DNA of 64,000 nucleotides from Asterias rubens (taxonomy: Eukaryota). The stretch spans positions 4,092,001 to 4,156,000 of the forward strand of contig NC_047067.1 in assembly GCF_902459465.1 (NCBI RefSeq), read 5' to 3'. Under the pieces are notes generated by a model, which ran no database searches, was not told where the DNA came from, and saw only the letters and a program-made list of their open reading frames with translations. The translations under genes were made by a program, and so were the position numbers. Of this stretch, positions 15,276 through 45,800 are shown piece by piece (positions within the stretch are counted from its first letter, which is position 1; every line of letters begins with the position of its first letter).

Positions 15276-15489
15276 GCTTGTCACCCATTAGGGAATGCAT
15301 GCCTATCAATGCCACCCTGTTGGGAATGCATGCCCTATACTCCCACCGTGAAGGGGGATGCATGTATGCCTATGTGTACTATTGCCGGCCTGTCCGGGAT
15401 GCCACCCTGTTGGGAATGCGGGCCTCAGTATTGTCACCGCGTTCGGAATGAAAGCCTAATGTTGCCCCCCCCCCCCGTTGAAAATGCAG

Positions 15490-15950
15490 GCCTAAAGTTG
15501 CCACCCTGTTGGTCAGGCCTAAAGTTGCCACCCTGTTGGTCAGGCCTAAAGTTGCCACCCTGTTGGTCAGGCTTAAAGTTGCCACCCTGTTGGTTAAGGC
15601 CTAAAGTTGCCACCCTGTTGGTCAGGCCTAAAGTTGCCACCCTGTTGGTCAGGCCTAAAGTTGCCACCCTGTTGGTCAGGCCTAAAGTTGCCACCCTGTT
15701 GGTCAGGCCTAAAGTTGCCACCCTGTTGGTTAAGGCCTAAAGTTGCCACCCTGTTGGTCAGGCCTAAAGTTGCCACCCTGTTGGTCAGGCCTAAAGTTGC
15801 CACCATGTTGGTCAGGCCTAAAGTTGCCACCATGTTGGTGAGGCCTAAAGTTGCCACCCTGTTGGTGAGGCCTGTTGCCACCATGTTGGCCAGGCCTATA
15901 GTTGCCACCGTGTTGGTTAAGGCCTAAAGTTGCCACCCTGTTGGAAATGC
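15490..15950. repeat. 27-bp tandem minisatellite, about 17 copies, with degenerate flanks (about 14860-16020)
   Basis: Unit CCTAAAGTTGCCACCCTGTTGGTCAGG; explains the repetitive ORFs on both strands. Confidence 0.95.
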
Positions 15951-16094: not shown

Positions 16095-16149
16095 ATGGGG
16101 CGATTCTGCTTTGATATCGCCTTCTGCAGTCTGGTATGTTTGTTCCTCG
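16095..16149 (+). CDS. Start exon, signal peptide
   Basis: caaaATG; [18 protein letters not shown] then G|gtaagt; acceptor ttttcctag at 16051. Confidence 0.8.
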
Positions 16150-19100: not shown

Positions 19101-22100
19101 AGTCCTCAGCCTTGTGATAGTCATCCATGCCAACATGGCGGTATATGCCATAATCATGGAACAACATATGAGTGTGTTTGCCCCAGTGGCTGCTCAGGAG
19201 CACGCTGTGAACTAGGTAAGTATGTACGTTTCAAACCGTCTTATAGACGATGTGACCTCTGACGTCACTCGAAAACCATAACATGATTCGCGTGCATACC
19301 GCTGTTTCGGCAGCCAGCTAGAAAAATTATGCACTCTTACCATGACTACGCGTCTTTTTGCCCGGCGAAACATGACGTATACAATGTTTTGTCAACAGAG
19401 GGCAGTTTGAATGTAAACATAGGTCACATCGTCTATATACACCCAAGATAAACATGCCAATAAACAATGGATTACTATTCTCTGACAACTATTCTCCCAA
19501 AGTTATTAACTAGTAGCAGCAATATATGAACTAGATTTAATAATTGACTTACAATGCGAACACAACTATCCTGCTGGGTGTTCAATTAAAGGCGCAGTAA
19601 AAACAAAACGAAAGCAAAAAATAAACAACAGACACAATAAATGGAGTCCTTGAAAACCTGTGACAAAAGATAAGTTTTAAGAAGAGATTTGAATTGTGTG
19701 ATACAAAGACAAGATCTAAGATCAGGTGGTAGAGAGTTCCAGATGCGTGGCGCAGCTGAGACTTGGGTTCAATGATGCATGGCACTTGATCGAAGATTCC
19801 TTGATGGGAGGGATCAGTGAAGTTGTTTCAATATGGGGGTGAAAGAACATGATTTTCTAGACAGTGTCACGAAGCGGTGTTTTGGAGGCATTAAAAACGG
19901 GATAGTTGGTCGCAAGGGCGACTGTAGAGAAGAGCAATGACTTTGTCAAGAAAAGAGGTAATTAGCAAAATGCACGAATGACCTTTTCAGTGGTACTCTT
20001 GTCCAAGTACTTGCGAATCTTACCAATATTCCCCCATGTGATATGATGACAGACGAATTTTGATGTTGATATGTAGTTGAAGTGTCAAAAATAACCCTTC
20101 AAGTTCCGTGTGAGACCTATTCGAGCGTCACCGATGGAAACGTATGGCACGGAAACATTTGTAAACTGTGGACGTTATTATTTCTCAACAATGAGTGTGG
20201 ACTCGTAGAATTACTCGTGCATAAATATTTGTAGTTATAACACACCTCTTGCTTTTTCTGTATTCTGGTTGGCTGAAACACGGTCACGTGGGATGAACTA
20301 ATATAGGCTAGTGATCGCGCGCGCGTGTTTTGCGGGAATAGTACCAGAGCGGGCACTAGTCTTTGCAAATAGTGCCCGCGGTAACAGCGCCCTCTCTTGA
20401 CTTGAACCGTGAACAAACTACAAAATTCCTTTATCTGTTCTTATTTGACATTTTAAGACCGACCTGTGTTATAAAACACATATTGACTGGCATAATTCGG
20501 TAACTAGTGTACGTCTATTCCCCCTCGGGCCTGTGAGTGACCAGAAGAGGGGCCTATTTCCCTCGGCCTCGGGAAATAGGTCGCTCTTCTGGTCACTCAA
20601 AGACCCTCGTGGGAATAGACGTATACTAGTAACCTCGTTGCCAGTCAATATGTGTATGCTAAACTACTAGTCATCATTCATTTGATGTACAGTCTTCTAT
20701 AAAGAGAAAACTTATGTGGACCAAGAGACCATTATTAAAGCTCTCAGTATTGCAGCTGCCGCACATTCAAATACCATCTCGATCAAGAGTAGATTCGTAA
20801 TGAATCTACAGTTAAGGGTAGAATCATATACGAATCTACACCTTCATGTCATGATGTTTTCTCTATAATTTTAGAAAATAAACTGTTGGACACCATCAAA
20901 GGAGCTACAGGAAGCGGCAGCAGTCAAACTTACCCTGACCATGTCAACTCGTAAGTTTCAATCATGCGACCACGAGTATTGTAGATCTTGTAGATCTTTA
21001 TAATGTGCTGAAACCAACACATTGATTCATTGTGCATTGTTACCGATATCGTGACAAAAACACGTATGCAGTAGGCTTTTTCCGTTTTAGTACAAAATTA
21101 ATAAAATGGTAATTGAAGGCCCTATCTGTTTTTTCAGCATGCCTAAAGTTTAAGTTTTATTTAAATAATGAACTTGGATAGAAAGGTTTATAAAAAGCCT
21201 GCATGTAAACTATTTTTGCAGGTCATTTTTCCAAGTTTTTTTTTTCCAATTAAACTTTTGCTCAATTTACATCTCATAACATACGTAAATTGTCATTTTC
21301 AATTGTCGTTATAGCTTTCTCTTTCAGAAGGTATAAGTAATTTATGAATGGAGAACGATTAATCCGAAAATCTATATTTCTTAACAGAAAATCAAATTCT
21401 GGAAGCAATGAAGTGCCAGGTAAGTGAATCAATACGATCTATAGGGGCTTTATGTTACCTATAATGTTGCTCATCTCAAGCCTTTAGTTCTTGACAAGAC
21501 TGCATCAGTGATCGTAACTTTCTGATAACAACAGCAAACTTCTTTTCAAACTTGGCACCTGTATCCTCTTCTCATTTTATGTTTTACCATTCCAAGTTTC
21601 TCTGGACGTCAGTATTGAACTGTTCTGTTTGCATTTAAGCTTTAGGTGATACACAAAACCCAACCAAGTCCGCAAGTAAAGAGAGCCGCCCCTCTTCCTC
21701 TGGCAGCAGCAGTCATACAGACCCTGACCACGTCAACTCGTAAGTTTCATTCACGCGACCACAAATTTGGTAGAACTATATTGACTTTCCAAAATGAGCC
21801 GGAACTTAAAAGCAAAAATGTTGCTTTATTGTGCATTGTGACGGATAACGTGAACAATCTATGCAGAAGTCTTCTTCCTTTTTACAGAGTTTAGCGACTA
21901 AGAAAAACAAAAAGTAAGTTTAACTTTTATTTAAATAACGAATTGGGATAGAAAAGCTTAAGAAAAGCCTGTTTGTAAACCATTTACATCTCATTATATA
22001 TTATATACGTATAAAACTGTCATTTTCGTTTGCTGTTGTAGCTTTGTCTTTCACAAGGTAAAGGTAAATTAACGTATGGTAGATGGTTAATAAAAAAAAA

Positions 22101-25100
22101 TCTATGTTTCTTAACAGAAAACCAAGTTCTGAAAGCAATGAAGTGCCAGGTAAGTGAATCATCACGATCTCTATAGGGGCCTTATCTTTCCTATAATGTT
22201 GCTCATCTCAAGCCTTTAGTTCTTGAAATCACTGCATCGGTGATCGTTATTTTCTGATAACAACAGCAAACTTCTTTTCAAACTTGGCACCGGTATCCTC
22301 TTCTTAGTAGTATCTTTGTTTAGATTTTTGATCATGTATTTAAATTGTGTTTTTTTCAGCACCTAATCCTCAGCCTTGCGATAGTCATCCATGCCAACAT
22401 GGCGGTGTATGCCAAAATAAAGGACAATTATTTGAGTGTGTTTGCCCCAGTGGCTGCTCAGGAAGACGCTGTGAAAATGGTAAGCATGTAAATATCAAAC
22501 CGTCTTATATACACCTAAGTTTAAGATGTGAGTGATGTGAATTGATGGTTTTAGATATTGATTGATATTTCTGTTTAATTTTGTCTTACATTAACTACAA
22601 TGTATAGGACCTGTTCAAGACCCATGTGCGAATAACCCTTGTGAGCATGGGGGAGCATGTTCACCTTATGGATCCAGCTACCGATGCAGTTGCCCGTCAG
22701 CGTACATGGGTTCTAGATGCCAACTAGGTATCAATGAGTTTTACTTGTTCGAGCGTAGTTACTTCTGAACTGTGGAACACCAACTCTATGTTCTGTTTCG
22801 CCTTTGTCAATCAGTTATCAAGACCAAAAACACTTGAGCAGATCATTACGTACTGGTGTAACATGCGACTGTTACAATTACTGCTTCTTTTCATCTCCAC
22901 TGACACAATTTGAGCACAATAAACCCGAGAGGTATTGCTCTTAAAGTTATTATTTAATCACTAACTCTCGTTAACTTTGATCTGATTACCGATGACATTC
23001 CAATGCAATTTATCACCCAATTCGGCATGTGTTAATACTAAGTATTACCTGAAAGGATTTAATAAGCACTATTAATTTTAATCCACGATTCTCTGAACGC
23101 CAATATTTAACTAATCTGTTCTTATAAAATCTTTAGGCAAAACACAAAACCCAACCAAATCTGCAAGTAAAGAAAGCGGACATTCTTCCCATGGCAGCAG
23201 CAGTCATGAAGACCCTGACCATGTCAAACCGTAAGTTTCATTCATGCGACCACAAATATGGTAGATCTTTGTTTTTTCCCCCAACAAATAATAAGTAAAA
23301 AAACATGAAGGCCCTGTCTGTTTTTCTCAGCAAACCTTAAAGTTTAACATTTTTCTTAAATAACGAACTTGGATAGAACAGGTTAAGTAAACCCTGCATG
23401 TTAACTATTTTTGTAGGACGTTTTTCTAAGTAATAGGTTTTTTTCTCGAGCTGCTTTTGTTCCAATCACATCTCATTACATACGTCATATGTCATTTTCA
23501 TTTGTTTTCTCTTTCAAAAGGTATAAGTAACTAACCAATGGTAGATGATTAATCCGAAAATCTATATTTCTTAACAGAAAATCAAATTCTGGAAGCAATG
23601 AAGTGCCAGGTAAGTGAATCAATACGATCTATAGGGGCTTTATCTTACCTATAATGTTGCTCATCTCAAGCCTCTTTAAATCACTGCATCAGTTATCGTT
23701 ATTTTCTGATAACAACGGCCAGTTGCTTTTCAAACTTGGCACCTGTATCCTCTTCTTAGTAGAATTGCTCAACCAAGCTGAGTTATACCTTGAAAACTTT
23801 AAGAAATTTTATGTTTTACCATTCCAAGTTTCTCTGGACGTCATTATTGATCTATTCTGTTTGCACTTAAGCCTTAGGAGATACACAAAACCCAACCAAG
23901 TCTGCGAGTAAAGAGAACCGCCCCTCTTCCCCTGGCAGCAGCAGTCATACAGACCCTGATCACGTCAACTCGTAAGTTTCATTCACGCGACCACAAATTT
24001 GGTAGAACATTATTGTTTTTCCAAAATGTGCTGAAACTTAAAGGCAAAAATGTTGCCTTGGTGTGCATTGTGACGGATAACGTGAACAATCTGTGCAGAA
24101 GTCTTGTTCCATTTTAGTGAGTTTATCGAAAGAAAAAACAATTCAAATATTTAGGACCTATCTGTTTTTTTCTCAGCAGACCTTTGAGAGTAAGTTTTAT
24201 TTAAATAACGAGTTGGGATAAAAAGCTTAAGAAAAGCCTGCATGTAACTTAGTTGTGTTGGTCGTTTGTCTTTTTTTTAGCTACTTTTATTCAATTTACA
24301 TCTCATTACATACGTAAACTGTCATTTTCCTTTTGTATTATAGCTTTGTCTTTCAAAAGGTATAAGTAATTAACGATTGGTAGATGATCAATCCGTAAAT
24401 CTATGTTTCTTAACAGAAAATCAGGTGATGAAAGCAATGAAGTGCCAGGTAAGTGAATCAATACAATCCATAGGGGCTTTATCTAGTTGCTCATCTCAAG
24501 CCTTTAGTTCTTGAAATCACTGCATCAGTGATCGTAATTATCTGATAACAACAGCAAACTTCTTTTCAAACTTGGCACCGGTATCCTCTTCTTAGTAGAA
24601 TCTTAGTTTAGATTATTGCCCATGTATTTAAATTGTGTTATTTTTTCAGCACCTAATCCCCAGCCTTGCGATAGTCATCCATGCCAACATGGCGGTGTAT
24701 GCCAAAATAAAGGACAATTATTTGAGTGTGTTTGCCCCAGTGGCTGCTCAGGAAGACGCTGTGAAAATGGTAAGCATGTAAATATCAAACCGTCTTATAT
24801 ACACCTAAGTTTAAGATGTGAGTGATGTGAATTGATGGTTTTAGATATTGATTGATATTTCTGTTTAATTTTGTCTTACATTAACTACAATGTATAGGAC
24901 CTGTTCAAGACCCATGTGCGAATAACCCTTGCGAGCATGGGGGAGCATGTTCACCTTATGGATCCAGCTACCGATGCAGTTGTCCGTCAGCGTACATGGG
25001 TTCTAGATGCCAATTAGGTATTATTGATTTTTACTTGTTCGAGCGTAGTTACTTCTGAACTGTGGAATACCAACTCTATGTTTTGTTTCGCCGTTGTCAA

Positions 25101-28100
25101 TCAGTTACCAAGACCAAAAACACTTGAGCAGATCATTACGTACTGGTGTAACATGCGACTGTTACAAATACTGCTTCTTTTCATCTCCACTGACACAATT
25201 TGAGCACAATAAACCCGAGAGGTATTGCTCTTAAAGTTATTATTTAATCACTAACTCTCGTTAACTTTGATCTGATTACCGATGACGTTCCAATGCAATT
25301 TATCGCCAAATTCGGCATGTGTTAATACTAAGTATTACCTGAAAGGATTTAATAAGCACTATTAATTTTAATCCACGATTCTCTGAACGCCAATATTTAA
25401 CTAATCTGTTCTTATAAAATCTTTAGGCAAAACACAAAACCCAACCAAATCTGCAAGTAAAGAAAGCGGACATTCTTCCCATGGCAGCAGCAGTCATGAA
25501 GACCCTGACCATGTCAAACCGTAAGTTTCATTCATGCGACCACAAATATGGTAGATCTTTGTTTTTTCCCCCAACAAATAATAAGTAAAAAAACATGAAG
25601 GCCCTGTCTGTTTTTCTCAGCAAACCTTAAAGTTTAACATTTTTCTTAAATAACGAACTTGGATAGAACAGGTTAAGTAAACCCTGCATGTTAACTATTT
25701 TTGTAGGACGTTTTTCTAAGTAATAGGTTTTTTTCTCGAGCTGCTTTTGTTCCAATCACATCTCATTACATACGTAATATGTCATTTTCATTTGTTTTCT
25801 CTTTCAAAAGGTATAAGTAACTAACCAATGGTAGATGATTAATCCGAAAATCTATATTTCTTAACAGAAAATCAAATTCTGGAAGCAATGAAGTGCCAGG
25901 TAAGTGAATCAATACGATCTATAGGGGCTTTATCTTACCTATAATGTTGCTCATCTCAAGCCTCTTTAAATCACTGCATCAGTTATCGTTATTTTCTGAT
26001 AACAACGGCCAGTTGCTTTTCAAACTTGGCACCTGTATCCTCTTCTTAGTAGAATTGCTCAACCAAGCTGAGTTATACCTTGAAAACTTTAAGAAATTTT
26101 ATGTTTTACCATTCCAAGTTTCTCTGGACGTCATTATTGATCTATTCTGTTTGCACTTAAGCCTTAGGAGATACACAAAACCCAACCAAGTCTGCGAGTA
26201 AAGAGAACCGCCCCTCTTCCCCTGGCAGCAGCAGTCATACAGACCCTGATCACGTCAACTCGTAAGTTTCATTCACGCGACCACAAATTTGGTAGAACAT
26301 TATTGTTTTTCCAAAATGTGCTGAAACTTAAAGGCAAAAATGTTGCCTTGGTGTGCATTGTGACGGATAACGTGAACAATCTCTGCAGAAGTCTTGTTCC
26401 ATTTTAGTGAGTTTATCGAAAAAAAAAAAAATACAAATATTTAGGACCTATCTGTTTTTTTCTCAGCAGACCTTTAAGTTTGCCTTTTATTTAAATAACG
26501 AATTGGGATAAAAAAGCTTCAGAAAAGCCTGTTTGTAAACTATTTGTGTAGGTCGTTTATCAGTTTTTTTCTCGATCTATTTTTTTTTTCCCCATTTATA
26601 TCTCATTGTATAAGTAAACTGTCGTTTTCGTTAGATTTAATATAGCTTTGTCTTTCACAAGGTAAAGGTAAATTAACGAATGGTAGATGGTTAATAAAAA
26701 AAAATTGTTTCTTAACAGAAAACCAAGTTCTGAAAGCAATGAAGTACCAGGTAAGTGAATCATCACGATCTATAAAGGGGCCTTATCTTTCCTATAATGT
26801 TGCTCATCTCAAGCCTTTAGTTCTTGACATGACTCCATCGGTGATCGTAATTTGCTGATAACAACGGCAAGCTACTTTTCAAACTTGGTACCGTAGAGAA
26901 GTAATGCCTTATTATTTAACCACCAATTCTCACTTTCTTTCATGTGACTACCTTCAGATGAAATTCCCGCGCATTGTTTTCACCAAATTCAGCTTTTTTT
27001 TATTCCAAGTTATACCTTAAAGGATTTAAGCAATTTTTTGTTTCACTATTCCTAGTTTCTCTGGACGTCAGTATTGAATTATTCTGTTTGCATTTAAGCT
27101 TTAGGTGATACACACATTCCAACCAAGTCTGCAAGTAAAGAAAGCCGTCCCTCTTCCCCTGGCAGCAGCAGTCATAAAGACCCTGACCATGTCAACTCGT
27201 AAGTTTCATTCATTCGACCACATTTTGGTAGAATTTGTTTTTCTCCAGAATGTGCTGAAACTTAAAGCCAAGATGTTGCCTTGGTGTGCATTGTGACCGA
27301 TAACGTGAACAATCTATGCAGAAGTCTTCTTCCATTTTACTGAGTTTGTCGTATACAAAATATACGAAAAAATACAAAAAAATGTAGGCCCTATCTGTTT
27401 TTCTCAGCAGACCTTTGAGAGTAAGTTTTATTTAAATAACGAGTTGGGATAAAAAGCTTAAGAAAAGCCTGCATGTAACTTAGTTGTGTTGGTCGTTTGT
27501 CTTTTTTTTTAGCTACTTTTATTCAATTTACATCTCATTACATACGTAAACTGTCATTTTCCTTTTGTATTATAGCTTTGTCTTTCAAAAGGTATAAGTA
27601 ATTAACGATTGGTAGATGATCAATCCGTAAATCTATGTTTCTTAACAGAAAATCAGGTGATGAAAGCAATGAAGTGCCAGGTAAGTGAATCAATACAATC
27701 CATAGGGGCTTTATCTAGTTGCTCATCTCAAGCCTTTAGTTCTTGAAATCACTGCATCAGTGATCGTAATTATCTGATAACAACAGCAAACTTCTTTTCA
27801 AACTTGGCACCGGTATCCTCTTCTTAGTAGAATCTTAGTTTAGATTATTGCCCATGTATTTAAATTGTGTTATTTTTTCAGCACCTAATCCCCAGCCTTG
27901 CGATAGTCATCCATGCCAACATGGCGGTGTATGCCAAAATAAAGGACAATTATTTGAGTGTGTTTGCCCCAGTGGCTGCTCAGGAAGACGCTGTGAAAAT
28001 GGTAAGCATGTAAATATCAAACCGTCTTATATACACCTAAGTTTAAGATGTGAGTGATGTGAATTGATGGTTTTAGATATTGATTGATATTTCTGTTTAA

Positions 28101-31100
28101 TTTTGTCTTACATTAACTACAATGTATAGGACCTGTTCAAGACCCATGTGCGAATAACCCTTGCGAGCATGGGGGAGCATGTTCACCTTATGGATCCAGC
28201 TACCGATGCAGTTGCCCGTCAGCGTACATGGGTTCTAGATGCCAATTAGGTATTAATGATTTTTACTTGTTCGAGCGTAGTTACTTCTGAACTGTGGAAC
28301 ACCAACTCTATGTTTTGTTTCGCCGTTGTCAATCAGTTACCAAGACCAAAAACACTTGAGCAGATCATTACGTACTGGTGTAACATGCGACTGTTACAAA
28401 TACTGCTTCTTTTCATCTCCACTGACACAATTTGAGCACAATAAACCCGAGAGGTATTGCTCTTAAAGTTATTATTTAATCACTAACTCTCGTTAACTTT
28501 GATCTGATTACCGATGACATTCCAATGCAATTTATCACCAAATTCGGCATGTGTTAATACTAAGTATTACCTGAAAGGATTTAATAAGCACTATTAATTT
28601 TAATCCACGATTCTCTGAACGCCAATATTTAACTAATCTGTTCATATAAAATCTTTAGGCAAAACACAAAACCCAACCAAATCTGCAAGTAAAGAAAGCG
28701 GACATTCTTCCCATGGCAGCAGCAGTCATGAAGACCCTGACCATGTCAAACCGTAAGTTTCATTCATGCGACCACAAATATGGTAGATCGTTGTTTTTCC
28801 CCCCAACAAATAATAAATAAAAAAAACATGAAGGCCCTGTCTGTTTTTCTCAGCAAACCTTAAAGTTTAACATTTTTCTTAAATAACGAACTTGGATAGA
28901 ACAGGTTAAGTAAACCCTGCATGTTAACTATTTTTGTAGGACGTTTTTCTAAGTAATAGGTTTTTTTCTCGAGCTGCTTTTGTTCCAATCACATCTCATT
29001 ACATACGTAATATGTCATTTTCATTTGTTTTCTCTTTCAAAAGGTATAAGTAACTAACCAATGGTAGATGATTAATCCGAAAATCTATATTTCTTAACAG
29101 AAAATCAAATTCTGGAAGCAATGAAGTGCCAGGTAAGTGAATCAATACGATCTATAGGGGCTTTATCTTACCTATAATGTTGCTCATCTCAAGCCTCTTT
29201 AAATCACTGCATCAGTTATCGTTATTTTCTGATAACAACGGCCAGTTGCTTTTCAAACTTGGCACCTGTATCCTCTTCTTAGTAGAATTGCTCAACCAAG
29301 CTGAGTTATACCTTGAAAACTTTAAGAAATTTTATGTTTTACCATTCCAAGTTTCTCTGGACGTCATTATTGATCTATTCTGTTTGCACTTAAGCCTTAG
29401 GAGATACACAAAACCCAACCAAGTCTGCGAGTAAAGAGAACCGCCCCTCTTCCCCTGGCAGCAGCAGTCATACAGACCCTGATCACGTCAACTCGTAAGT
29501 TTCATTCACGCGACCACAAATTTGGTAGAACATTATTGTTTTTTCAAAATGTGCTGAAACTTAAAGGCAAAAATGTTGCCTTGGTGTGCATTGTGACGGA
29601 TAACGTGAACAATCTCTGCAGAAGTCTTGTTCCATTTTAGTGAGTTTATCGAAAAAAAAAAAATACAAATATTTAGGACCTATCTGTTTTTTTCTCAGCA
29701 GACCTTTAAGTTTGCCTTTTATTTAAATAACGAATTGGGATAAAAAAGCTTCAGAAAAGCCTGTTTGTAAACTATTTGTGTAGGTCGTTTATCAGTTTTT
29801 TTCTCGATCTATTTTTTTCCCCCATTTATATCTCATTGTATAAGTAAACTGTCGTTTTCGTTAGATTTAATATAGCTTTGTCTTTCACAAGGTAAAGGTA
29901 AATTAACGAATGGTAGATGGTTAATAAAAAAAAAATTGTTTCTTAACAGAAAACCAAGTTCTGAAAGCAATGAAGTGCCAGGTAAGTGAATCATCACGAT
30001 CTATAAAGGGGCCTTATCTTTCCTATAATGTTGCTCATCTCAAGCCTTTAGTTCTTGACATGACTCCATCGGTGATCGTAATTTGCTGATAACAACGGCA
30101 AGCTACTTTTCAAACTTGGTACCGTAGAGAAGTAATGCCTTATTATTTAACCACCAATTCTCACTTTCTTTCATGTGACTACCTTCAGATGAAATTCCCG
30201 CGCATTGTTTTCACCAAATTCAGCTTTTGTTTATTCCAAGTTATACCTTAAAGGATTTAAGCAATTTTTTGTTTCACTATTCCTAGTTTCTCTGGACGTC
30301 AGTATTGAATTATTCTGTTTGCATTTAAGCTTTAGGTGATACACACATTCCAACCAAGTCTGCAAGTAAAGAAAGCCGTCCCTCTTCCCCTGGCAGCAGC
30401 AGTCATAAAGACCCTGACCATGTCAACTCGTAAGTTTCATTCATTCGACCACATTTTGGTAGAATTTGTTTTTCTCCAGAATGTGCTGAAACTTAAAGCC
30501 AAGATGTTGCCTTGGTGTGCATTGTGACCGATAACGTGAACAATCTATGCAGAAGTCTTCTTCCATTTTACTGAGTTTGTCGTATACAAAATATACGAAA
30601 AAATACAAAAAAATGTAGGCCCTATCTGTTTTTCTCAGCAGACCTTTGAGAGTAAGTTTTATTTAAATAACGAGTTGGGATAAAAAGCTTAAGAAAAGCC
30701 TGCATGTAACTTAGTTGTGTTGGTCGTTTGTCTTTTTTTTAGCTACTTTTATTCAATTTACATCTCATTACATACGTAAACTGTCATTTTCCTTTTGTAT
30801 TATAGCTTTGTCTTTCAAAAGGTATAAGTAATTAACGATTGGTAGATGATCAATCCGTAAATCTATGTTTCTTAACAGAAAATCAGGTGATGAAAGCAAT
30901 GAAGTGCCAGGTAAGTGAATCAATACAATCCATAGGGGCTTTATCTAGTTGCTCATCTCAAGCCTTTAGTTCTTGAAATCACTGCATCAGTGATCGTAAT
31001 TATCTGATAACAACAGCAAACTTCTTTTCAAACTTGGCACCGGTATCCTCTTCTTAGTAGAATCTTAGTTTAGATTATTGCCCATGTATTTAAATTGTGT

Positions 31101-36777: not shown

Positions 36778-36810
<33 letters not shown>

Positions 36811-39800
36811 AACTTATAAAGCGCACAAATCCATCAAAGTGCTCATGGCGCTAAATACAAAGAATAATATTGACATGTACAATAACCAAAATTGAAACGT
36901 AAGCCTAAGCTAAGAAGAAATCAAGATCATGTTGAAGAGAAAATACAGTACAAATGCAATATCAAAGAAAACATCGAAGGGTAGAAATCAAACCATTTTC
37001 TCAAATACTTGGTTGAAAAGATGTGTCTTAAGGTTTTTCTTAAATTGTGTTAAAGAAACAGATGATTTTACTAGTGCTGGCAATTTGTTCCAAAGGCGTG
37101 GGGCAGCATGTGAGAAAGATCGGTCTCCCCATGAATGATTGGATATGGGCTCAATAAGGAGACTAGAATTGTAAGACCGGAGTTTGCGAGGAGGATTGTA
37201 TGGTTTGAGTAGATCATCAATATATGCAGGGGCATTGTTGGTGAGTGATTTATACACAAAAAGCAGAAGTTTATACTTGACTCTACTGCTTACGGGTAAC
37301 CAGTGTAATTCTTTCAAAATCGGAGTTATATGACAGGACTTTTTATTTAAGGTGATAACACGAGCAGCATAGTTCTGAATACGCTGAAGTCGTTCAATTT
37401 GAGTATTAGGAAGACCATATAGAAGTGAGTTACACATGTCAATTCTGGAAACGACGACGGAGTGGACTATTTGCTCAGTTGCTTTTTGTGTTAAATATTT
37501 CCTCACTTTGCCTATATTACGAATGTGAAATGTTGTAGAACGTGCAATACTAGAAATATGTGAATAAGTGTCATGGAAGAGTCGAAGATCACACCAAGAT
37601 TACGAGCTTTGGTAACAGCGGTAACTTCGGAGTCACCTATATTAATATGGGGAATAGTAACTTTAGAGAGTTGTTGGCGTGAACCAATTATCATAAATTC
37701 AGTCTTGTTATCATTAAGTTTAAGGAAATTGTCTTGCATCCAAACACGAATTTCACCAACACACGTTTCAATACGACTGATGCTCTCATCAGCAAAATGT
37801 TTGGATGGTATAAAAGAGAAATACAACTGAGTGTCATCAGCATATACATGATAGTTCAGTTTGTGTTTCAGGATGATGCTATGAACTGGGTAGGTGTACA
37901 CCGTGAACCACAGCGGTCCAAGAACCGACCCCTGAGGGACTGAACAATCATGAACAACTGGGTCCGATGTGGAATTGCCAATGCGTACATGTTGTGGTCT
38001 GTTTTGCAAATAGGATTGGCACCATTTAAGGGCATTGCCCTGTAAACCAATAATATCACGTAGTCTCTTGAGCAAAATAGTGTGATCCACGGTGTCAAAA
38101 GCCGCACTTAAATCAAGCAGAATCAGGGCAGTCACATGGCCTTCATCCATAGCACATAAAATGTCATTTTGCACCCGTAATAGTGCCGATTCAGTGCTAT
38201 GCTTGGACCTGTATGCTGATTGAAATTTATCAGCAAGGCCAGAGTCAGAGATAACAGTATTCAATCTGGAGGCGACTATGCGCTCAATGGTCTTGCCAAC
38301 AAACTTCAAATTAGCCACCGGTCTGTAGTTAGAAAAAGTCTCAATATCTAAACCTGGCTTCTTGATTAGGGGACGAATGTAAGCAGTCTTAAGACTGTCT
38401 GGAAAATTACCTTGTTCAAAGGACTTGTTCACAATAGTAGTAATAAGAGGTGCTAGAACATTAATACACCTTTTAAGAAGATGTGTAGGTATGGGGTCCA
38501 GTTCACATGATTTAGAAGGAGAACTGCTTATTAATTTTATAATCTCAGACACAGTAGCAGATTCAAACTGGGAAATTTTTGTTACATGAGCACACACAGG
38601 TAAATGGTTAATCTGCGATACAGTAGAACTAGTTGCTACAGGAAAAATACTACGAATATTAACAATTTTGTTGCTGAAATAGTTAGAAAAACTATCTGCC
38701 AGAACCGCATCTGATACACTACTGGGTAATACAGGCTTTTCCTTTGTTTGATTTAGTAACCCATCAACAACTTTAAATAGTTTCTTCTGATCTCCTGAAC
38801 AATCTGTAATTTGAGAGGAGTAATATTCAATCTTAGCTACATTAATTAATTCATTAACCCTTTGTCTTTGATTACAATACAACTGTCTATCAATCTCAAG
38901 TCTTGAGTGCCTCCATTTTCTCTCATGAACTCTGCGCAGCTTTCTAGCAGTCTGTATAGCATCATTAAACCAAGGACTATGAGGTCTCAAACGAACAGAT
39001 CTAGTGCGAGCTGGTGCATGCTTGTTCAAAAGACTACTAAGGATAACCTCATAATTTTGCACACAAGAGTCGAGATCGGTAGAAGTCATATCAAAGTCGG
39101 AGAGTAACACAACCAGATCATTGCGGAAAACATCAACATCAATAGACTTAATGTTACGTGTTGTAATAATAACTTTAGGGGGTTGTGGTTTCTAAAGTGA
39201 TAATTGAGACATAACAGCAAAGTGATCAGATAATCCAGGATGAAGATAAATACCAGAAACAAGTGTAGCATTTTCACGAGTTATGAGTAGGTCAAGCAAA
39301 TCCCCATGTATGTGCGTTGATCCTGAGACATGCTGATGAAGACCATAGGATTGTAATATGGTCTTAAACCGGATGGCGTTGGTATCATTTAAATTATCCA
39401 TATGAATGTTAAAATCACCCCCCAAAAAAAAATGGTAAGCATGTAATTATACACACCCAAGTTTAAGATGTGAGTGATGTGAATTGATGGTTTTAGATAT
39501 TGATTGATATTTCTGTTTAATTTTGTCTTACATTAACTGCAATGTATAGGACCTGTTCAAGACCCATGTGCGAATAACCCTTGCGAGCATGGGGGAGCAT
39601 GTTCACCTTATGGATCCAGCTACCGATGCAGTTGCCCGTCAGCGTACATGGGTTCTAGATGCCAATTAGGTATTAATGATTTTTACTTGTTCGAGCGTAG
39701 TTACTTCTGAACTGTGGAACACCAACTCTATGTTTTGTTTCGCCGTTGTCAATCAGTTATTTAAGACAAAAACACTTGAGCAGATCATTACGTACTGGTG

Positions 39801-42800
39801 TAACATGCGACTGTTACAAATACTGCTTCTTTTCATCTCCACTGACACAATTTGAGCACAATAAACCCGAGAGGTATTGCTCTTAAAGTTATTATTTAAT
39901 CACTAACTCTCGTTAACTTTGATCTGATTACCGATGACATTCCAATGCATGTTATCAACCAATTCGGCATGTGTTAATACCAAGTATTACCTGAAAGGAT
40001 TTAATAAGCAATATTTATATTAATCCACGATTCTCTGAACGCCAATATTTAATTAATCTGTTCATATTAAATCTTTAGGCAAAACACAAAACCCAACCAA
40101 GTCTGCAAGTAAAGAAAGCGGCCCCTCTTCCCATGGCAGCAGTAGTCATGAAGACCCTGACCATGTCGAACCGTAAGTTTCATTCATGCGACCACAGATA
40201 TGCAGGTAGATCTTTGTTTTTTTCCCCCAACAAATAATAAAAAAAAAACATGAAGGCCTTATCTGTTTTTCTCAGCAAACCTTAAAGTTTAAGATTTCTT
40301 TTAATAACGAACTTAAATAGAAAGGTTAAGTAAAGCCTGCATGTTAACTATTTTTGTAGAACGTTTGTATAAGTAATGTTTTTTTTATCTCAAGCTGCTT
40401 TTGTTCCAATCACATCTCATTACATACGTAATATGTCATTTTTATTTGTTTTCTCTTTCAAAAGGTATAAGTAACTAACCAATGGTAGATGATTAATCCG
40501 AAAATCTATATTTCTTAACAGAAAATCAAAATCTGGAAGCAATGAAGTGCCAGGTAAGTGAATCAATACGATCTATAGGGGCTTTATCTTACAAATAATG
40601 TTGCTCATCTCAAGCCTTTAGTTTGTTTTATGTTATGTTTTACCATTCCAAGTTTCTCTGGACGTCATTATTGAATTATTCTGTTTGCACTTAAGCTTTA
40701 GGTGATACACACATACCAACCAAGTCTGCAAGTAAAGAAAGGCGCCCCTCTTCCCCTGGCAGCAGCCCTGGCAGCAGCAGTCATAAAGACCATGACCACG
40801 CCAACTCGTAAGTTTCATTCACGCGACCACAAATTTGGTTGAACATTCTTGTTTTTTAAGTTTAGGTTTTATTTAAATAACAAACTTGGCTAGAAAAGCT
40901 TAAGAAAAACCTGCATGTGAAGTATTTGTGAAGATCGTTTTTCATTTTTTGGTTTTCAAGCTACTATCATTTACGTAAACTGTCACGATTAGTAGATGAT
41001 TAATCCGAAAATCTATGTTTCTTAACAGAAAATCAAATTCTGGAAGCAATGAAGTGCCAGGTAAGTGAATCAATACGATCTATAGGGGCTTTATCTTACC
41101 AATAATGTTGCTCATCTCAAGCCTTTAGTTTTTTTAAGTTATGTTTTACCATTCCAAGTTTTTCTGGACGTCATTATTGATCTATTCTGTTTGCACTTAA
41201 GCTTTAGGAGATACACAAAACCCAACCAAGTCTGCAAGTAAAGAAAGCCGTCACTCTTCCCCTGGCAGCAGCAGTCATACAGACCCTGACCACGTCAACT
41301 CGTAAGTTTCATTCACGCGACGACAAATTTGGTAGAACATTATTGTTTTTCCAAAATGTGCTGAAACTTAAAGGCAAAAATGTTGCCTTGGTGTGCATTG
41401 TGACGGATAACGTGAACAATCTCTGCAGAAGTCTTGTTCCATTTTACTGAGTTTATCGACAAAAAAAAATACACAAATATTTAGGACCTATCTGTTTTTT
41501 TCTCAGCAGACCTTTAAGTTTACCTTTTATTTAAATAACGAATTGGGATAAAAAAGCTTAAGAAGAGCCTGTTTGTAAACTATTTGTGTAGGTCGTTCAT
41601 CAGTTTTTTTCTCGATCTATTTTTTTTCCCCCATTTATATCTCATTGTCGTTTTCGTTAGATTTAATACAGCTTTGTCTTACACAAGGTAAAGGTAAATT
41701 AACGAATGGTAGATGGTTAATAAAAAAAAATATATGTTTCTTAACAGAAAACCAAGTTCTGAAAGCAATGAAGTGCCAGGTAAGTGAATCATCACGATCT
41801 CTATAGGGGCCTTATCTTACCTATAATGTTGCTCATCTCAAGCCTTTAGTTCTTGACATGACTCCATCGGTGATCGTAATTTGCTGATAACAACGGCAAG
41901 CTACTTTTCAAACTTGGTACCGTAGAGAAGTAATGCCTTATTATTTAACCACCAATTCTCACTTTCTTTCATGTGACTACCTTCAGATGAAATTCCCGCG
42001 CATTGTTTTCACCAAATTCAGCTTTTTTTTATTCCAAGTTATACCTTAAAGGATTTAAGCAATTTTTTGATTCACCATTCCAAGTTTCTCTGGACGTCAT
42101 TATTGAATTATTCTGTTTGCATTTAAGCTTTAGGTGATACACAAAACCCAACCAAGTCTGCAAGTAAAGAGAACCGCCCCTCTTCCCCTGGCAGCAGCAG
42201 TCATACAGACCCTGACCACGTCAACTCGTAAGTTTCATTCACGCGACCACAACTTTGGTAAAACATTATTGTTTTTCCAAAATGTGCTGAAACTTAAAGG
42301 CAAAAATGTTGCCTTGGTGTGCATTGTGACGGATAACGTGAACAATCTATGCAGAAGTCTTCTTCCATTTTACTGAGTTTGTCGTATACAAAACATACAA
42401 AAAAATACAAAAAATGTAGGCCCTATCTGTTTTTCTCAGCAGACCTTTAAGCGTAAGATTTATTTAAATAACGAGTTGGAATAAAAAGCTAAAGAAAAGC
42501 CTGCATGGAAACTAGTTGTGTAGGTCGTTTGTCAGTTTTTTTTTAGAGCTACTTTTGTTCAATTTACATCTTATTACATACGTAAACTGTCATTTTCATT
42601 TTGTATTATAGCTTTGTCTTTCAAAAGGTATAAGTAATTAACGATTGGTAGATGATCAATCCGTAAATCTATGTTTCTTAACAGAAAATCAAGTGATGAA
42701 AGCAATGAAGTGCCAGGTAAGTGAATTAATACAATCCATAGGGGCTTTATCTAGTTGCTCATCTCAAGCCTTTAGTTCTTGAAATCACTGCATCGGTGAT

Positions 42801-45800
42801 CGTTATTTTCTGATAACAACAGCAAACTTCTTTTCAAACTTGGCACCGGTATCCTCTTCTTAGTAGAATCTTAGTTTAGATTTTTGATCATGTTTTTAAA
42901 TTGTTTTTTTTTCAGCACCTAAACCTCAGCCTTGCGATAGTCATCCATGCCAACATGGCGGTGTATGCCAAAATAAAGGACAATTATTTGAGTGTGTTTG
43001 CCCCAGTGGCTGCTCAGGAAGACGCTGTGAAAATGGTAAGCATGTAATATCAAACCGTCTTATATACACCTAAGTTTAAGATGTGAGTGATGTGAATTGA
43101 TGGTTTTAGATATTGATTGATATTTCTGTTTAATTTTGTCTTACATTAACTACAATGTATAGGACCTGTTCAAGACCCATGTGCGAATAACCCTTGCGAG
43201 CATGGGGGAGCATGTTCACCTTATGGATCCAGCTACCGATGCAGTTGCCCGTCAGCGTACATGGGTTCTAGATGCCAATTAGGTATCAATGATTTTTACT
43301 TGTTCGAGCGTAGTTACTTCTGAACTGTGGACCACCAATTTTATGTTTTGTTTGGTCTTTGTCAATCAGTTATCAAGACCAAAAGTACAATTGAGCAGAT
43401 CATTACGCACTGGTGTAACATGCGACTGTTACAAATACTGCTTCTTTTCATCTCCACTGACACAATTTGAGCACAATAAACCCGAGAGGTATTGCTCTTA
43501 AAGTTATTATTTAATCACTAACTCTCGTTAACTTTGATCTGATTACCGATGACATTCCAATGCAATTTATCACCAAATTCGGCATATGTTAATACCAAGT
43601 ATTACCTGAAAGGATTTAATAAGCACTATTAATTTTAATCCACGATTCTCTGAACGCCAATATTTAACTAATCTGTTCATATAAAATCTTTAGGCAAAAC
43701 ACAAAACCCAACCAAATCTGCAAGTAAAGAAAGCGGACATTCTTCCCATGGCAGCAGTAGTCATGAAGACCCTGACCATGTCAAACCGTAAGTTTCATTC
43801 ATGCAACCACAAATATGGTAGATCTTTGTTTTTTCCCCCAACTAAAATAAATAAAAAACATGAAGGCCTTATCTGTTTTTCTCAGCAAACCTTAAAGTTT
43901 AAGATTTCTTTAAATTACGAACTTGGATAGAACAGGTTAGTTTTTTTTTCTCAAGCTGCTTTTGTTCCAATCACATCTCATTACATACGTAATATGTCAT
44001 TTTCATTTGTTTTCTCTTTCAAAATGTATAAGTAACTAACGAATTGTAGATGATTAATCCGAAAATCTATATTTCTTAACAGAAAATCAAATTCTGGAAG
44101 CAATGAAGTGCCAGGTAAGTGAATCAATACGATCTTTAGGGGCCTTATCTTACCTATGTTGCTCATCTCAAGCCTTTAGTTCTTTAAATCACTGCATCAG
44201 TTATCGTTATCTTCTGATAACAACGGCCAGTTGCTTTTCAAACTTGGCACCTGTATCCTCTTCTTAGTAGAATTGCTCAACCAAGCTGAGTTATACCTTG
44301 AAAACTTTAAGAAATTTTATGTTTTACCATTCCAAGTTTCTCTGGACGTCATTATTGATCTATTCTGTTTGCACTTAAGCCTTAGGAGATACACAAAACC
44401 CAACCAAGTCTGCGAGTAAAGAGAACCGCCCCTCTTCCCCTGGCAGCAGCAGTCATACAGACCCTGATCACGTCAACTCGTAAGTTTCATTCATTCGACC
44501 ACATTTTTGTAGAATTTGTTTTTCTCCAGAATGTGCTGAAACTTAAAGTCAAGATGTTGCCTTGGTGTGCATTGTGACCGATAACGTGAACAATCTATGC
44601 AGAAGTCTTCTTCCATTTTAGTTATTTTGTTAATTTAAGAAGAAAAAAGAAGAAAAACAAAAGAAGAAGACCATTATCTCTTTTTCTCCGCAGATCTTTA
44701 AGTCTAACTTTTATTTAAATAACGAACTTGAGATTAAAACCAAACCAATCAAAGCCAACTTTTCCAGTTTGCTTTCTTATTTAATCCAATATAATGGACC
44801 CGGATCAAAATCTTCGCGATCTGGCAGTCGTGAGCACTTTCCAAAAAAGTTAGTTTAGCGAACAAAACCACCAGCATTTACTGCTTGTGATAACTAAACA
44901 TTTCGCAGACACGTTTAATATTTGTACTCTCAAAAACTTCCAAAAGGTTTGTATTAGTTGGAATTAAAGTATAATAACTTGTGCAGTCTCTCGACGGGAA
45001 CGTTGAGGTTGTTTTATTTAGTGTCTCTGCCATAAATGTTTTTTGTTTTAACACTGTACTCCTTTCCAGACATGCATCAGGAAGTAAATCAGGGAGTGGT
45101 TCAGGGCGTGGCTCAGGCAGTAACGAAAGAAGAGGTAATTAAGAATGGATTTATTGTAAATACTATAATCAAAACAACTTACTACAAAGGAAGACAAACT
45201 ATCAATGCAAACATACTCTTCGGTGGGTGTGTACTAAGACAAATTACTGGAGCAAGATTTGAACTAACGACCTCCTCGTTAACGTGTTCAACCAACTATG
45301 AGCTACACAGCGAAAACAACAACAGTTTGACCAACGTTTTGACCAACCATAGCTTTACTGATATTGCGATGCCGTTGAGAACAAACTTTTTTGTTTAATT
45401 GTATTTTAAAAAATGGTGGCTAGGAAGGTAAAATCTATATATGTTATAGCAGTTGGCAATATTATCTGTACCACCGTTAGTCCGGAGGTCGTTGGTTCAA
45501 ATCCCACTCTTCTCAATTAGAATTGTCTTTGTTCAACAACAAATTTACTAAAATTAACCCTTCCAGCTTCCCTTTGGGTTTATTACTTGGGTTAACAGGA
45601 ATACGTTGCCTTGGATCGGACGAGTTGATCTATAAAAAGCGTATGAAACCGTTTGTTATGAAGGGGGGGGGGGGAGATGTTTTAAAAGTAGAATATAATG
45701 ATCCACACAAGTAGCACTCGAAATTGCACGGTTTTCATTTTACGTCACGAACTAACACGGTCGGCCATTTATGGGAGTCAAAAATTGGCCGACCGTGTTC

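What the first reader, a model, noticed from the sequence alone, without database searches (positions are those of the whole stretch)
20875..45134. Low-complexity 42-aa repeat encoded by obligate exon pairs (94 nt phase 1-2 + 32 nt phase 2-1)
Each linker (e.g. [42 protein letters not shown]) is split over two mini-exons, neither frame-neutral alone. All 22 pairs keep AG/GT sites, have no stops, and the only exonic indel within the repeat family is an in-frame 12-nt duplication (33570, 40702). The introns show many homopolymer indels. The same 1-2/2-1 pairing builds the unique linkers at 16661/18105 and 46517/46896, so it is a gene-wide design rule.
Basis: seen in the sequence. Interest (0 to 1): 0.82.

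Follow-up and report, generated by a model that had tools for sequence, protein, structure and literature searches.

The report
Sea-star glue gene's repeated linker exons
The repeat is real and is spliced as described: it is the previously unresolved middle of the Asterias rubens adhesive gene Sfp4, 22 two-exon linker units made by tandem duplication. The exon-pair rule is inherited structure with a known precedent, not a new design principle.

Summary
On the + strand, 22 long "A" exons alternate strictly with 22 short "B" exons between 20875 and 45134. All keep AG/GT, none has a stop, and the only length changes are multiples of 3.

The A-exon peptide found a single protein among 1.84 billion: sea star footprint protein 4b (Sfp4b) of Asterias rubens. 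That cDNA-derived protein is collinear with the window. RNA contigs show GT..AG joints A→B, B→A, A→last B and onward into unique EGF exons, with zero depth across most intron bins.

The correction: the cDNA and the RNA contigs use an acceptor 6 nt upstream in the A exons that follow a B exon (15 of 22). Those exons are 100 nt, not 94, and add Ala-Leu.

The array also holds six EGF exon pairs. One open frame of 1,683 aa runs from the start codon at 16095 to 48097, and FAMeT exons lie downstream. Published Sfp4b (334 aa, listed as complete) and Sfp4a therefore look like two ends of one gene.

The 1-2/2-1 pairing is inherited by tandem duplication. One pair is a clean recombinant with its crossover inside the phase-2 intron. 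Human LPA KIV-2 (160 + 182 bp exons) is a direct precedent.

The finding is useful for sea-star adhesion research but structurally ordinary.

The parts
16095..16149 (+). Exon 1: start codon and signal peptide of Sfp4b
   Evidence: tblastn of P0001 residues 1-18 at 100% identity; GT follows the exon
16661..18139 (+). Unique N-terminal linker pair: exons 16661-16733 (73 nt, phase 1-2) and 18105-18139 (35 nt, phase 2-1)
   Evidence: P0001 residues 19-54 at 100% identity; sequence read
19096..19215 (+). First EGF exon (120 nt, phase 1-1)
   Evidence: P0001 residues 55-94 at 100% identity; Pfam EGF match on P0001
20875..21419 (+). Pair 1: diverged A exon 20875-20950 (76 nt) and B exon 21388-21419 (32 nt)
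   Evidence: The cDNA has 4 extra residues here, an in-frame 12-nt polymorphism.
21640..22149 (+). Pair 2: A exon 21640-21739 (100 nt, -6 acceptor) and B exon 22118-22149
   Evidence: The cDNA contains ALGDTQ... mapping from 21639/21640
23137..23609 (+). Pair 3: A exon 23137-23230 (94 nt, follows an EGF exon) and B exon 23578-23609
23872..24448 (+). Pair 4, a recombinant unit: A exon 23872-23971 and B exon 24417-24448, with a crossover in the intron between about 24129 and 24168
   Evidence: It has 0 mismatches to the A1B1 unit up to about 24129 and 0-1 mismatch per 40 nt to the A2B2 unit from about 24168. The cDNA ends here and reads TCG TAA into the donor.
25427..25899 (+). Pair 5: A exon 25427-25520 (94 nt) and B exon 25868-25899
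26162..26750 (+). Pair 6: A exon 26162-26261 (100 nt) and B exon 26719-26750. This is the start of the canonical 3,232-nt higher-order unit.
27099..27680 (+). Pair 7: A exon 27099-27198 and B exon 27649-27680
28659..29132 (+). Pair 8: A exon 28659-28752 (94 nt) and B exon 29101-29132
29395..29981 (+). Pair 9: A exon 29395-29494 and B exon 29950-29981
30330..30910 (+). Pair 10: A exon 30330-30429 and B exon 30879-30910
31889..32362 (+). Pair 11: A exon 31889-31982 (94 nt) and B exon 32331-32362
32625..33215 (+). Pair 12: A exon 32625-32724 and B exon 33184-33215
33564..33928 (+). Pair 13: long A exon 33564-33675 (112 nt, carries the 12-nt in-frame duplication) and B exon 33897-33928
34068..34658 (+). 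Pair 14: A exon 34068-34167 and B exon 34627-34658
35017..35525 (+). Pair 15: A exon 35017-35116 and B exon 35494-35525
35874..36462 (+). Pair 16: A exon 35874-35973 and B exon 36431-36462
40079..40553 (+). Pair 17: A exon 40079-40172 (94 nt) and B exon 40522-40553
40696..41060 (+). Pair 18: long A exon 40696-40807 (112 nt) and B exon 41029-41060
41202..41779 (+). Pair 19: A exon 41202-41301 and B exon 41748-41779
42128..42716 (+). Pair 20: A exon 42128-42227 and B exon 42685-42716
   Evidence: RNA joint 42716|42916 into the EGF exon
43694..44114 (+). Pair 21: A exon 43694-43787 (94 nt) and B exon 44083-44114
   Evidence: RNA joints 43282|43694 and 43787|44083, both GT..AG
44380..45134 (+). 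Pair 22: A exon 44380-44479 (100 nt, -6 acceptor) and the diverged last B exon 45070-45134 (65 nt)
   Evidence: RNA joints 44114|44380, 44479|45070 and 45134|46182
22360..43282 (+). Six interspersed EGF exon pairs, each exon 120 nt and phase 1-1: 22360/22608, 24650/24898, 27882/28130, 31112/31360, 36662/39550, 42916/43163
   Evidence: Cysteine-pattern scan; Pfam EGF; coordinates and AG/GT; RNA joint 43035|43163
36782..39434 (-). 5'-truncated non-LTR retrotransposon. It separates EGF exon 36662-36781 from its donor, which now lies at 39438.
   Evidence: Sequence at both junctions; reverse transcriptase PF00078, E = 2e-32, on the minus-strand ORF
46182..48097 (+). Unique 3' continuation: EGF exon 46182-46298, linker pair 46517-46562 (46 nt) and 46896-46921 (26 nt), then EGF exons at about 47280-47392 and 47974-48097
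   Evidence: One 797-nt RNA contig (X1, depth 160.5) and its joints link these exons to the last array exons
53487..58319 (+). Downstream FAMeT-domain exons, the likely C-terminal (Sfp4a) part of the same gene
   Evidence: PF12248 matches at 55580-55972 and 58008-58319. The link to the array in mRNA beyond 48097 was not tested.

Best explanation
The stretch is the central part of the Asterias rubens adhesive-footprint gene Sfp4. A two-exon linker unit has been multiplied by unequal crossing-over into a 24-kb higher-order tandem array. The long exon runs from phase 1 to phase 2 and the 32-nt exon from phase 2 to phase 1. The canonical unit is 3,232 nt: A1-B1-A2-B2-EGF-EGF-A3-B3.

The intron inside the linker was copied with every duplication, so all 22 units share it and its phase. 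Taken together, a pair behaves as a phase 1-1 module that fits between the phase 1-1 EGF exons. Exchanges between paralogous introns of the same phase add or remove whole units without breaking the frame.

Shown here: the exons are transcribed and spliced in order. Shown here: they encode about 970 residues of Ser/Pro/Gly/Asn/His-rich, nearly non-hydrophobic sequence between disulfide-rich EGF pairs. Inferred from composition and a low-confidence fold: this sequence is intrinsically disordered.

Inferred function: flexible, hydrophilic spacers, probably modified on serine or threonine, in a secreted cohesive protein of the tube-foot adhesive. The number of spacers between EGF pairs, 2 to 6 here, is set by recombination.
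For: Identity:
- The A-exon peptide hits exactly one protein among 1.84 billion representatives. It is UVH36220.1, 'sea star footprint protein 4b [Asterias rubens]'.
- That protein maps collinearly, exon by exon, at 87-100% identity, from 16095 to 23972.

Transcription and splicing:
- RNA contigs give GT..AG joints 42716|42916, 43035|43163, 43282|43694, 43787|44083, 44114|44380, 44479|45070, 45134|46182, 46562|46896 and 46921|47280, plus an approximate joint ~46298|46517 whose ends as listed are CA..AG with two other letters between.
- Depth is zero across most intron bins; the exceptions are intronic repeat elements.

Open frame: 65 exons, 5,050 nt and 1,683 aa without a stop.

Frame constraint:
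- There is 1 in-frame indel in 138 exon columns, against 55 gap intervals in 743 intron columns.
- 10.2 would be expected in the exons at the intron rate (P about 4e-4).
- pN/pS is 0.46, and pS (0.168) equals the intron divergence (0.167).

Duplication mechanism:
- Unit copies are 97-100% identical.
- Pair 4 switches from 0 mismatches with the A1B1 unit to essentially 0 with the A2B2 unit inside its intron.

Disorder:
- Composition is S 26.5%, P 11.4%, H 6.6%, with 1% hydrophobic or aromatic residues and GRAVY -1.64.
- AlphaFold pLDDT is about 40 with no secondary structure in the linkers, against 60-83 in the EGF domains.

Biology, from PMC9382459:
- Sfp4a and Sfp4b are expressed only in type 1 adhesive gland cells.
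- Both map to the same place on chromosome 6.
- Sfp4b is rich in Ser and Gly.
- Sfp4a carries EGF and FAMeT domains.
- FAMeT exons lie downstream in the window.
Against: - The copy number in the assembly may not be exact. Several units are 100% identical, and this was not checked against reads.
- One EGF exon (36662-36781) has lost its donor to a retrotransposon. This haplotype must skip that exon, which is frame-neutral, or make an aberrant transcript.
- RNA contigs in the array are short, about 85-130 nt, and could come from any copy. The use of every individual unit is therefore not shown.
- Substitution-level constraint is weak. Variable sites by codon position are 9/9/16, which is not significant. 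Exons are no better conserved than their 30-nt intron flanks.
- Disorder, modification and the spacer role are inferred, not measured.
- The link from the array to the FAMeT exons beyond 48097 was not tested with RNA.
Confidence: 0.85

Rival explanations
1. Selected design rule. The asymmetric 1-2/2-1 split is kept by selection as a safeguard. Among near-identical splice sites, any single-exon skipping error then shifts the frame and is removed by nonsense-mediated decay, so only whole units can be lost.
For: - Skipping an A exon alone gives a stop after 12 codons, and skipping a B exon alone gives one after 3 codons.
- All 24 linker pairs in the gene share the phases, including two unique pairs with no detectable DNA homology to the array.
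Against: - The 22 array pairs are copies of one unit and count as one observation.
- Two further pairs sharing a phase-2 intron has a chance probability of about 0.05-0.11.
- The same pattern follows automatically from duplicating a segment that contains an intron, as in LPA KIV-2.
- No comparison with orthologues was possible.
Confidence: 0.1
2. Isoform ladder. Every A-exon donor reads xCG|TAA when it is not spliced. Intron retention or intronic polyadenylation at different units could therefore yield a series of truncated secreted proteins. The published 334-aa Sfp4b would be one real member of that series.
For: - All 22 A donors read TCGTAA or CCGTAA.
- The deposited protein ends exactly at the end of the A exon at 23971, with its last Ser matching TC+G.
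- It is listed as a complete ORF in PMC9382459.
Against: - Any phase-2 exon followed by GTAAGT gives this stop, so the feature is generic.
- The A→B introns within the laid stretch have zero RNA depth in run X1.
- The intron carries a run of 13 A, seen in the identical copy at about 26420, which could prime oligo-dT on pre-mRNA.
- Trinity isoforms in repeats are often truncated.
Confidence: 0.12
3. The repeat is a non-functional or decaying part of the gene. The exon-like segments would be kept only by recent duplication and gene conversion, not by use.
For: - Exons are no better conserved than the adjacent 30 nt of intron.
- Many copies are 97-100% identical, so there has been little time for decay.
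- A LINE has broken one EGF exon's donor.
Against: - The spliced exons are present in RNA contigs of runs under two coded organism labels and in an independent cDNA.
- There is no frameshift or stop in 44 exons, while the introns carry 45 indels that are not multiples of 3.
- The protein family was identified from secreted footprints (PMC9382459).
Confidence: 0.03

Closest known systems
Sea star footprint proteins Sfp4b and Sfp4a of Asterias rubens (Algrain et al. 2022, Open Biol 12:220103, PMC9382459; UVH36220.1)
   Same: - This is the same gene. The Sfp4b protein maps to window exons 16095-23972 at 87-100% identity.
- It has the reported signal peptide, EGF domains and Ser/Gly richness.
- Downstream EGF and FAMeT exons match the reported Sfp4a architecture.
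   Different: - The published sequences are a 334-aa protein listed as complete and a 769-aa fragment, and the paper states the ORF could not be solved.
- The genome and the RNA joints show a continuous frame of at least 1,683 aa, with 22 linker units and 6 internal EGF pairs between the two fragments.
- The 334-aa ORF ends where the frame reads into an unspliced donor (TCG TAA).
- The text of the paper that is held does not describe the exon-pair structure or the higher-order array.
Human LPA kringle IV type 2 repeat (PMC4378929)
   Same: - Both are intragenic tandem arrays whose unit holds two exons.
- Neither exon is a multiple of 3 (160 and 182 bp), while the sum is (342 bp).
- The introns are homogenised.
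- Units are gained and lost as wholes.
   Different: - The LPA unit encodes a folded kringle domain, is 5.5 kb long and has proven copy-number variation from 1 to more than 40.
- Here the unit encodes a disordered linker, is 0.5-1.5 kb long and is nested in a 3.2-kb higher-order repeat with EGF exons.
- Copy-number variation here is untested.
Mucin-type Pro/Thr/Ser tandem-repeat domains and repetitive marine adhesive proteins (for example the Thr-rich Sfp12 in PMC9382459)
   Same: Both are Ser/Thr/Pro-rich, hydrophilic, repeated, secreted sequences that probably carry O-linked modifications. S+T+P is 44% here.
   Different: - By general knowledge, mucin repeats are usually encoded in one large exon. 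Here every 42-48-aa unit is split over two mini-exons with introns of 0.15-1 kb.
- Here Ser dominates over Thr, and His is unusually high at 6.6%.
Phase 1-1 module rule for extracellular mosaic proteins (Patthy's exon-shuffling rule; general knowledge)
   Same: The EGF exons are all phase 1-1, and each linker pair is bounded by phase-1 introns, so any order of modules keeps the frame.
   Different: The linker module carries an internal phase-2 intron, so the module is the pair and not the single exon.

Membership tests
Sfp4 (Sfp4b/Sfp4a) gene of Asterias rubens | Encodes the deposited Sfp4b protein | tested here: met
   P0001 (UVH36220.1) is collinear with window exons, most at 100% identity
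Sfp4 (Sfp4b/Sfp4a) gene of Asterias rubens | Signal peptide, repeated EGF domains, and Ser/Gly-rich sequence | tested here: met
   Hydrophobic N-terminus with a helix at residues 5-21; Pfam EGF; composition
Sfp4 (Sfp4b/Sfp4a) gene of Asterias rubens | FAMeT domains in the C-terminal (Sfp4a) part at the same locus | tested here: inconclusive
   PF12248 exons lie at 55580-55972 and 58008-58319 on the same strand. The Sfp4a sequence could not be retrieved, and the RNA link was shown only as far as 48097.
Sfp4 (Sfp4b/Sfp4a) gene of Asterias rubens | Expression in type 1 adhesive gland cells and presence in footprints | not testable with these tools
   Reported in PMC9382459. Here only RNA presence in runs of coded origin was seen.
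Intragenic tandem array of two-exon coding units (LPA KIV-2 type) | The unit holds two exons, neither a multiple of 3, whose sum is a multiple of 3 | tested here: met
   100+32, 94+32, 112+32, 76+32 and 100+65 nt
Intragenic tandem array of two-exon coding units (LPA KIV-2 type) | Head-to-tail copies with homogenised introns and recombinant units | tested here: met
   97-100% identical 300-nt blocks spaced 3,230-3,234 nt apart; intronic crossover in pair 4
Intragenic tandem array of two-exon coding units (LPA KIV-2 type) | Copy number varies between individuals | not tested
No second haplotype of the array was available.
Mucin-type PTS tandem-repeat domain | Pro/Thr/Ser-rich repeated sequence | tested here: met
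   S 26.5%, P 11.4% and T 6.0% over 937 residues
Mucin-type PTS tandem-repeat domain | Repeats encoded in one large exon | tested here: not met
   Each unit is split over two mini-exons separated by introns
Mucin-type PTS tandem-repeat domain | Dense O-glycosylation | not testable with these tools
   Needs glycoproteomics of footprints

The most novel reading that the evidence does not exclude
The array may be a recombination-driven, copy-number-variable spacer that tunes the reach and compliance of the sea-star adhesive meshwork between individuals or populations. In addition, the universal xCG|TAA at the A-exon donors may let intron retention produce a ladder of truncated secreted isoforms, with the published 334-aa Sfp4b as one real member.
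Probability: 0.12. Interest if true: 0.55.

Novelty: new member of a known kind. Interest (0 to 1): 0.3.

Why it matters
For sea-star adhesion research, the window resolves a gene that the 2022 protein catalogue could not assemble. Sfp4b and Sfp4a appear to be the two ends of one large secreted protein. Its middle is about 970 residues of disordered Ser-rich linker alternating with EGF pairs.

This changes three things:
- The expected size of the protein.
- The peptide database that should be used to search footprint mass spectra. Junction peptides contain ...NEVPALGDT..., not ...NEVPGDT....
- The design of recombinant fragments for biomimetic glue work.

For gene-structure biology it is a clear non-vertebrate example of a two-exon coding unit amplified into a higher-order array. 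It includes a visible intronic crossover that shows how the frame survives. It does not establish a new principle.

Tried and rejected
- A fuzzy-regex scan for exon copies timed out. It was replaced by blastn.
Python showed there are no Ns in the window.
- The search for homologous proteins with Sfp4b returned only generic EGF proteins and no relative carrying the linker.
- The HMMER scan of 1.84 billion representatives found only Sfp4b itself. No orthologue could therefore be compared, and the age of the exon-pair design could not be tested.
- The look-up of encoding contigs found no contig encoding exactly Sfp4b. The nucleotide sequence after its stop codon could not be inspected, and the retained-intron reading of its end remains an inference from the genome.
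- The supplementary files of PMC9382459, which include the mass-spectrometry peptide data, are not held.
- Local alignment with shuffles between the unique linker exons plus flanks and the array units gave nothing beyond a shared donor context of about 15 nt.
- Descent of the linker from a degenerate EGF exon was considered, because 126 nt is close to 120 nt. It was dropped: the EGF exons here have no internal intron and there is no residual cysteine pattern.
- The DPDH motif was considered as a GDPH-type autocatalytic cleavage site. It was rejected as unsupported, because by general knowledge that site acts within a vWD domain and there is none here.

Full report
**What is in the sequence**

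The window has no Ns. BLAST of one exon copy with its flanks against the window finds 22 long exons ("A") and 21 short exons ("B") on the + strand. A diverged 65-nt last B exon lies at 45070-45134. Extraction with flanks shows AG before and GTAAGT after every copy. A and B alternate strictly.

The region is not linker only. Between some B exons and the next A exon lie two 120-nt EGF exons, both phase 1-1. There are six such EGF pairs.

The canonical higher-order unit is 3,232 nt: A1-B1-A2-B2-EGF-EGF-A3-B3. Blocks are 97-100% identical between units. The number of linker units between successive EGF pairs is 2, 3, 3, 6, 4 and 2.

**Identity**

The 30-aa A-exon peptide was scored against 1.84 billion representative proteins. 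It found exactly one (E = 7e-30, four matched stretches). That protein is UVH36220.1, "sea star footprint protein 4b [Asterias rubens]".

tblastn shows this 334-aa protein is collinear with the window:
- the signal-peptide exon at 16095,
- the unique linker pair at 16661/18105,
- the EGF exon at 19096,
- the first four linker pairs and the first EGF pair.

Most exons match at 100% identity. The window is therefore the Sfp4 locus of A. rubens.

Algrain et al. 2022 (PMC9382459) report the following:
- Sfp4b: 334 aa, listed as complete, with a signal peptide, rich in Ser and Gly.
- Sfp4a: 769 aa, incomplete, no signal peptide, with EGF and FAMeT domains.
- Both come from the same Trinity component and the same place on chromosome 6.
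- Both are expressed only in type 1 adhesive gland cells.
- Repeats and predicted splice variants prevented the authors from solving the ORF.

**Transcription and splicing**

RNA contigs of four runs were laid on 42600-48599.

Runs X1 and X2 give canonical GT..AG joints at:
- 42716|42916 (B→EGF)
- 43035|43163 (EGF→EGF)
- 43282|43694 (EGF→A)
- 44114|44380 (B→A)
- 45134|46182
- 46921|47280

X1 alone gives GT..AG joints at:
- 43787|44083 (A→B; X2 has it with three other letters)
- 44479|45070 (A→last B)
- 46562|46896

One further joint, at about 46298|46517 in X1 and X2, is listed with ends CA..AG and two other letters between, so its placement is approximate.

Depth is zero across most intron bins. 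The exceptions are bins holding intronic repeat elements. One 797-nt contig at depth 160.5 carries the chain from the last A exon into the unique EGF exons.

**Correction of the boundary**

The cDNA reads ...NEVP-AL-GDTQ... at both B→A junctions it covers, mapping from 21640 and 23872. The RNA joint is 44114|44380, not 44386. These are exactly the A exons that follow a B exon.

All three junctions that could be observed use the upstream site. Those exons are therefore 100 nt (112 nt for the two with the 12-nt duplication), and the unit is 44 or 48 aa. The six A exons that follow an EGF exon are 94 nt, and the first is 76 nt. The phases are unchanged. Minor use of the downstream site cannot be excluded, because 51 joints were not listed.

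**Frame**

Sixty-five exons were joined from the ATG at 16095 to 48097. They give 5,050 nt and 1,683 aa without a stop. The only defective site is the donor of EGF exon 36662-36781.

Other properties of the frame:
- Skipping an A exon alone gives a stop after 12 codons.
- Skipping a B exon alone gives a stop after 3 codons.
- All 22 A donors read TCG|TAA or CCG|TAA if unspliced.

The deposited Sfp4b ends in ...DPDHVNS, with the final Ser matching TC+G at 23970-23972. In spliced mRNA the next codon would be AAA. I infer that the "complete" ORF stops in a retained intron or a truncated assembly, and that Sfp4b is the N-terminal end of a much longer protein.

FAMeT exons (PF12248) lie downstream on the same strand at 55580-55972 and 58008-58319. 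This fits the description of Sfp4a. The RNA link beyond 48097 was not tested.

**Evolutionary signature**

Twenty pairs were aligned with their flanks.
- Mean pairwise substitution is 0.114 in A exons, 0.092 in B exons and 0.167 in introns.
- Introns have 55 distinct gap intervals, 45 of them not multiples of 3. Exons have one, 12 nt and in frame. At the intron rate 10.2 would be expected in the exons (P about 4e-4).
- Part of this deficit is mutational. Introns carry 10 homopolymer runs of 5 or more per 805 nt and exons none. Leaving out indels of 1-2 nt still predicts about 5.6 against 1 observed (P about 0.02, my arithmetic).
- pN/pS is 0.46, and pS is 0.168, equal to the intron divergence.
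- The codon-position bias in variable sites (9/9/16) is not significant.
- Exons (29% variable columns) are no better conserved than the 30 nt of intron beside them, about 31% (34/111, derived).

Coding status therefore rests on the cDNA, the RNA joints and the indel pattern.

Between individuals, the only exonic indel seen is an in-frame 12-nt difference in the first A exon, cDNA against genome.

**Mechanism of amplification**

Pair 4 (23872/24417) is identical to the A1-B1 unit up to about 24129. From about 24168 it is identical to the A2-B2 unit. This is an unequal crossover inside the phase-2 intron that removed one B exon and one A exon in register. It explains why the first unit is 2,290 nt rather than 3,232 nt. 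Pairs 16 and 20 are similar mosaics.

Exchanges between introns of like phase change the unit number without touching the frame. This is enough to explain why the pairs stay "obligate".

**The "gene-wide design rule"**

The two unique pairs (73+35 nt and 46+26 nt) do share the 1-2/2-1 phases. They show no DNA homology to the array beyond the donor context. With only two extra observations, chance (about 0.05-0.11) and ancient common descent both remain open.

Human LPA KIV-2 is a documented precedent: 160 + 182 bp exons, a 5.5-kb unit and 1 to more than 40 copies (PMC4378929).

**Product**

The linker residues are S 26.5%, P 11.4%, K 8.8%, N 7.6%, G 7.6%, D 6.8%, H 6.6%, E 6.5% and T 6.0%. Only 1% are hydrophobic or aromatic, GRAVY is -1.64 and pI is 6.2.

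A single-sequence AlphaFold model of Sfp4b gives pLDDT of about 40 and no secondary structure in the linkers. The EGF domains score 60-83 and show beta-hairpins. This is weak evidence, but it is consistent with disorder.

I infer hydrophilic, flexible spacers between EGF pairs in a cohesive footprint protein. They are probably O-glycosylated or phosphorylated, given the recurrent S-x-E motifs.

**Verdict**

The feature is real, expressed and correctly described apart from the 6-nt acceptor shift. It is a new, well-resolved example of a known kind of gene architecture in a known adhesive gene. Its main value is completing the Sfp4 gene model.

Noticed in passing
window 36782-39434 (minus strand): A 5'-truncated non-LTR retrotransposon sits one base before the donor of EGF exon 36662-36781. 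It has a reverse transcriptase domain (PF00078, E = 2e-32), and its (AAT)n tail abuts the exon. Reading on from the exon meets a stop after ...[14 protein letters not shown]. Skipping the 120-nt exon would keep the frame.
   Followed up: partly
window 23970-23975, and every A-exon donor: The deposited 'complete' 334-aa Sfp4b ends exactly where the frame reads TCG TAA into an unspliced GTAAGT donor. The published ORF is probably truncated by intron retention or assembly. An A13 run in the same intron, seen in the identical copy at about 26420, could prime oligo-dT on pre-mRNA.
   Followed up: partly
window 3005-6533 compared with 53487-58319: Near-identical FAMeT-type exon translations occur upstream of the gene and at its 3' end. 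An upstream tandem paralogue, possibly another chromosome-6 Sfp gene, ends just before Sfp4 begins.
   Followed up: no
window 13484-14092 and 15487-15944: Two minisatellites lie just upstream of the Sfp4 start codon at 16095. One has 31-nt units, 19.6 copies and 99% matches. The other has 27-nt units, 17 copies and 93% matches. The second lies within 150-600 nt of exon 1.
   Followed up: no
window 45400-46000, 47000-47200, 47600-47800: Introns hold elements with very high RNA contig depth, up to about 1e5, and many variant contigs in all runs. One loose end resembles a tRNA 5' part. These are probably SINE-like or other abundant repeats.
   Followed up: no
alignment of 20 pairs; intron flanks about 45 nt after A donors and about 100 nt before A acceptors: The intron sequence next to the exons is as conserved between subfamilies as the exons themselves, with 86-95% column identity. 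This could reflect splicing signals for the mini-exons or conversion tracts centred on the exons. It remains unexplained.
   Followed up: no
window 42600-48100, RNA runs labelled organism B (X2, X3): Contigs from a second organism label differ at about 1-4% of letters in the unique exons. X2 shows seven of the joints, including the -6 acceptor. The architecture is therefore shared by a close relative or a divergent population.
   Followed up: no
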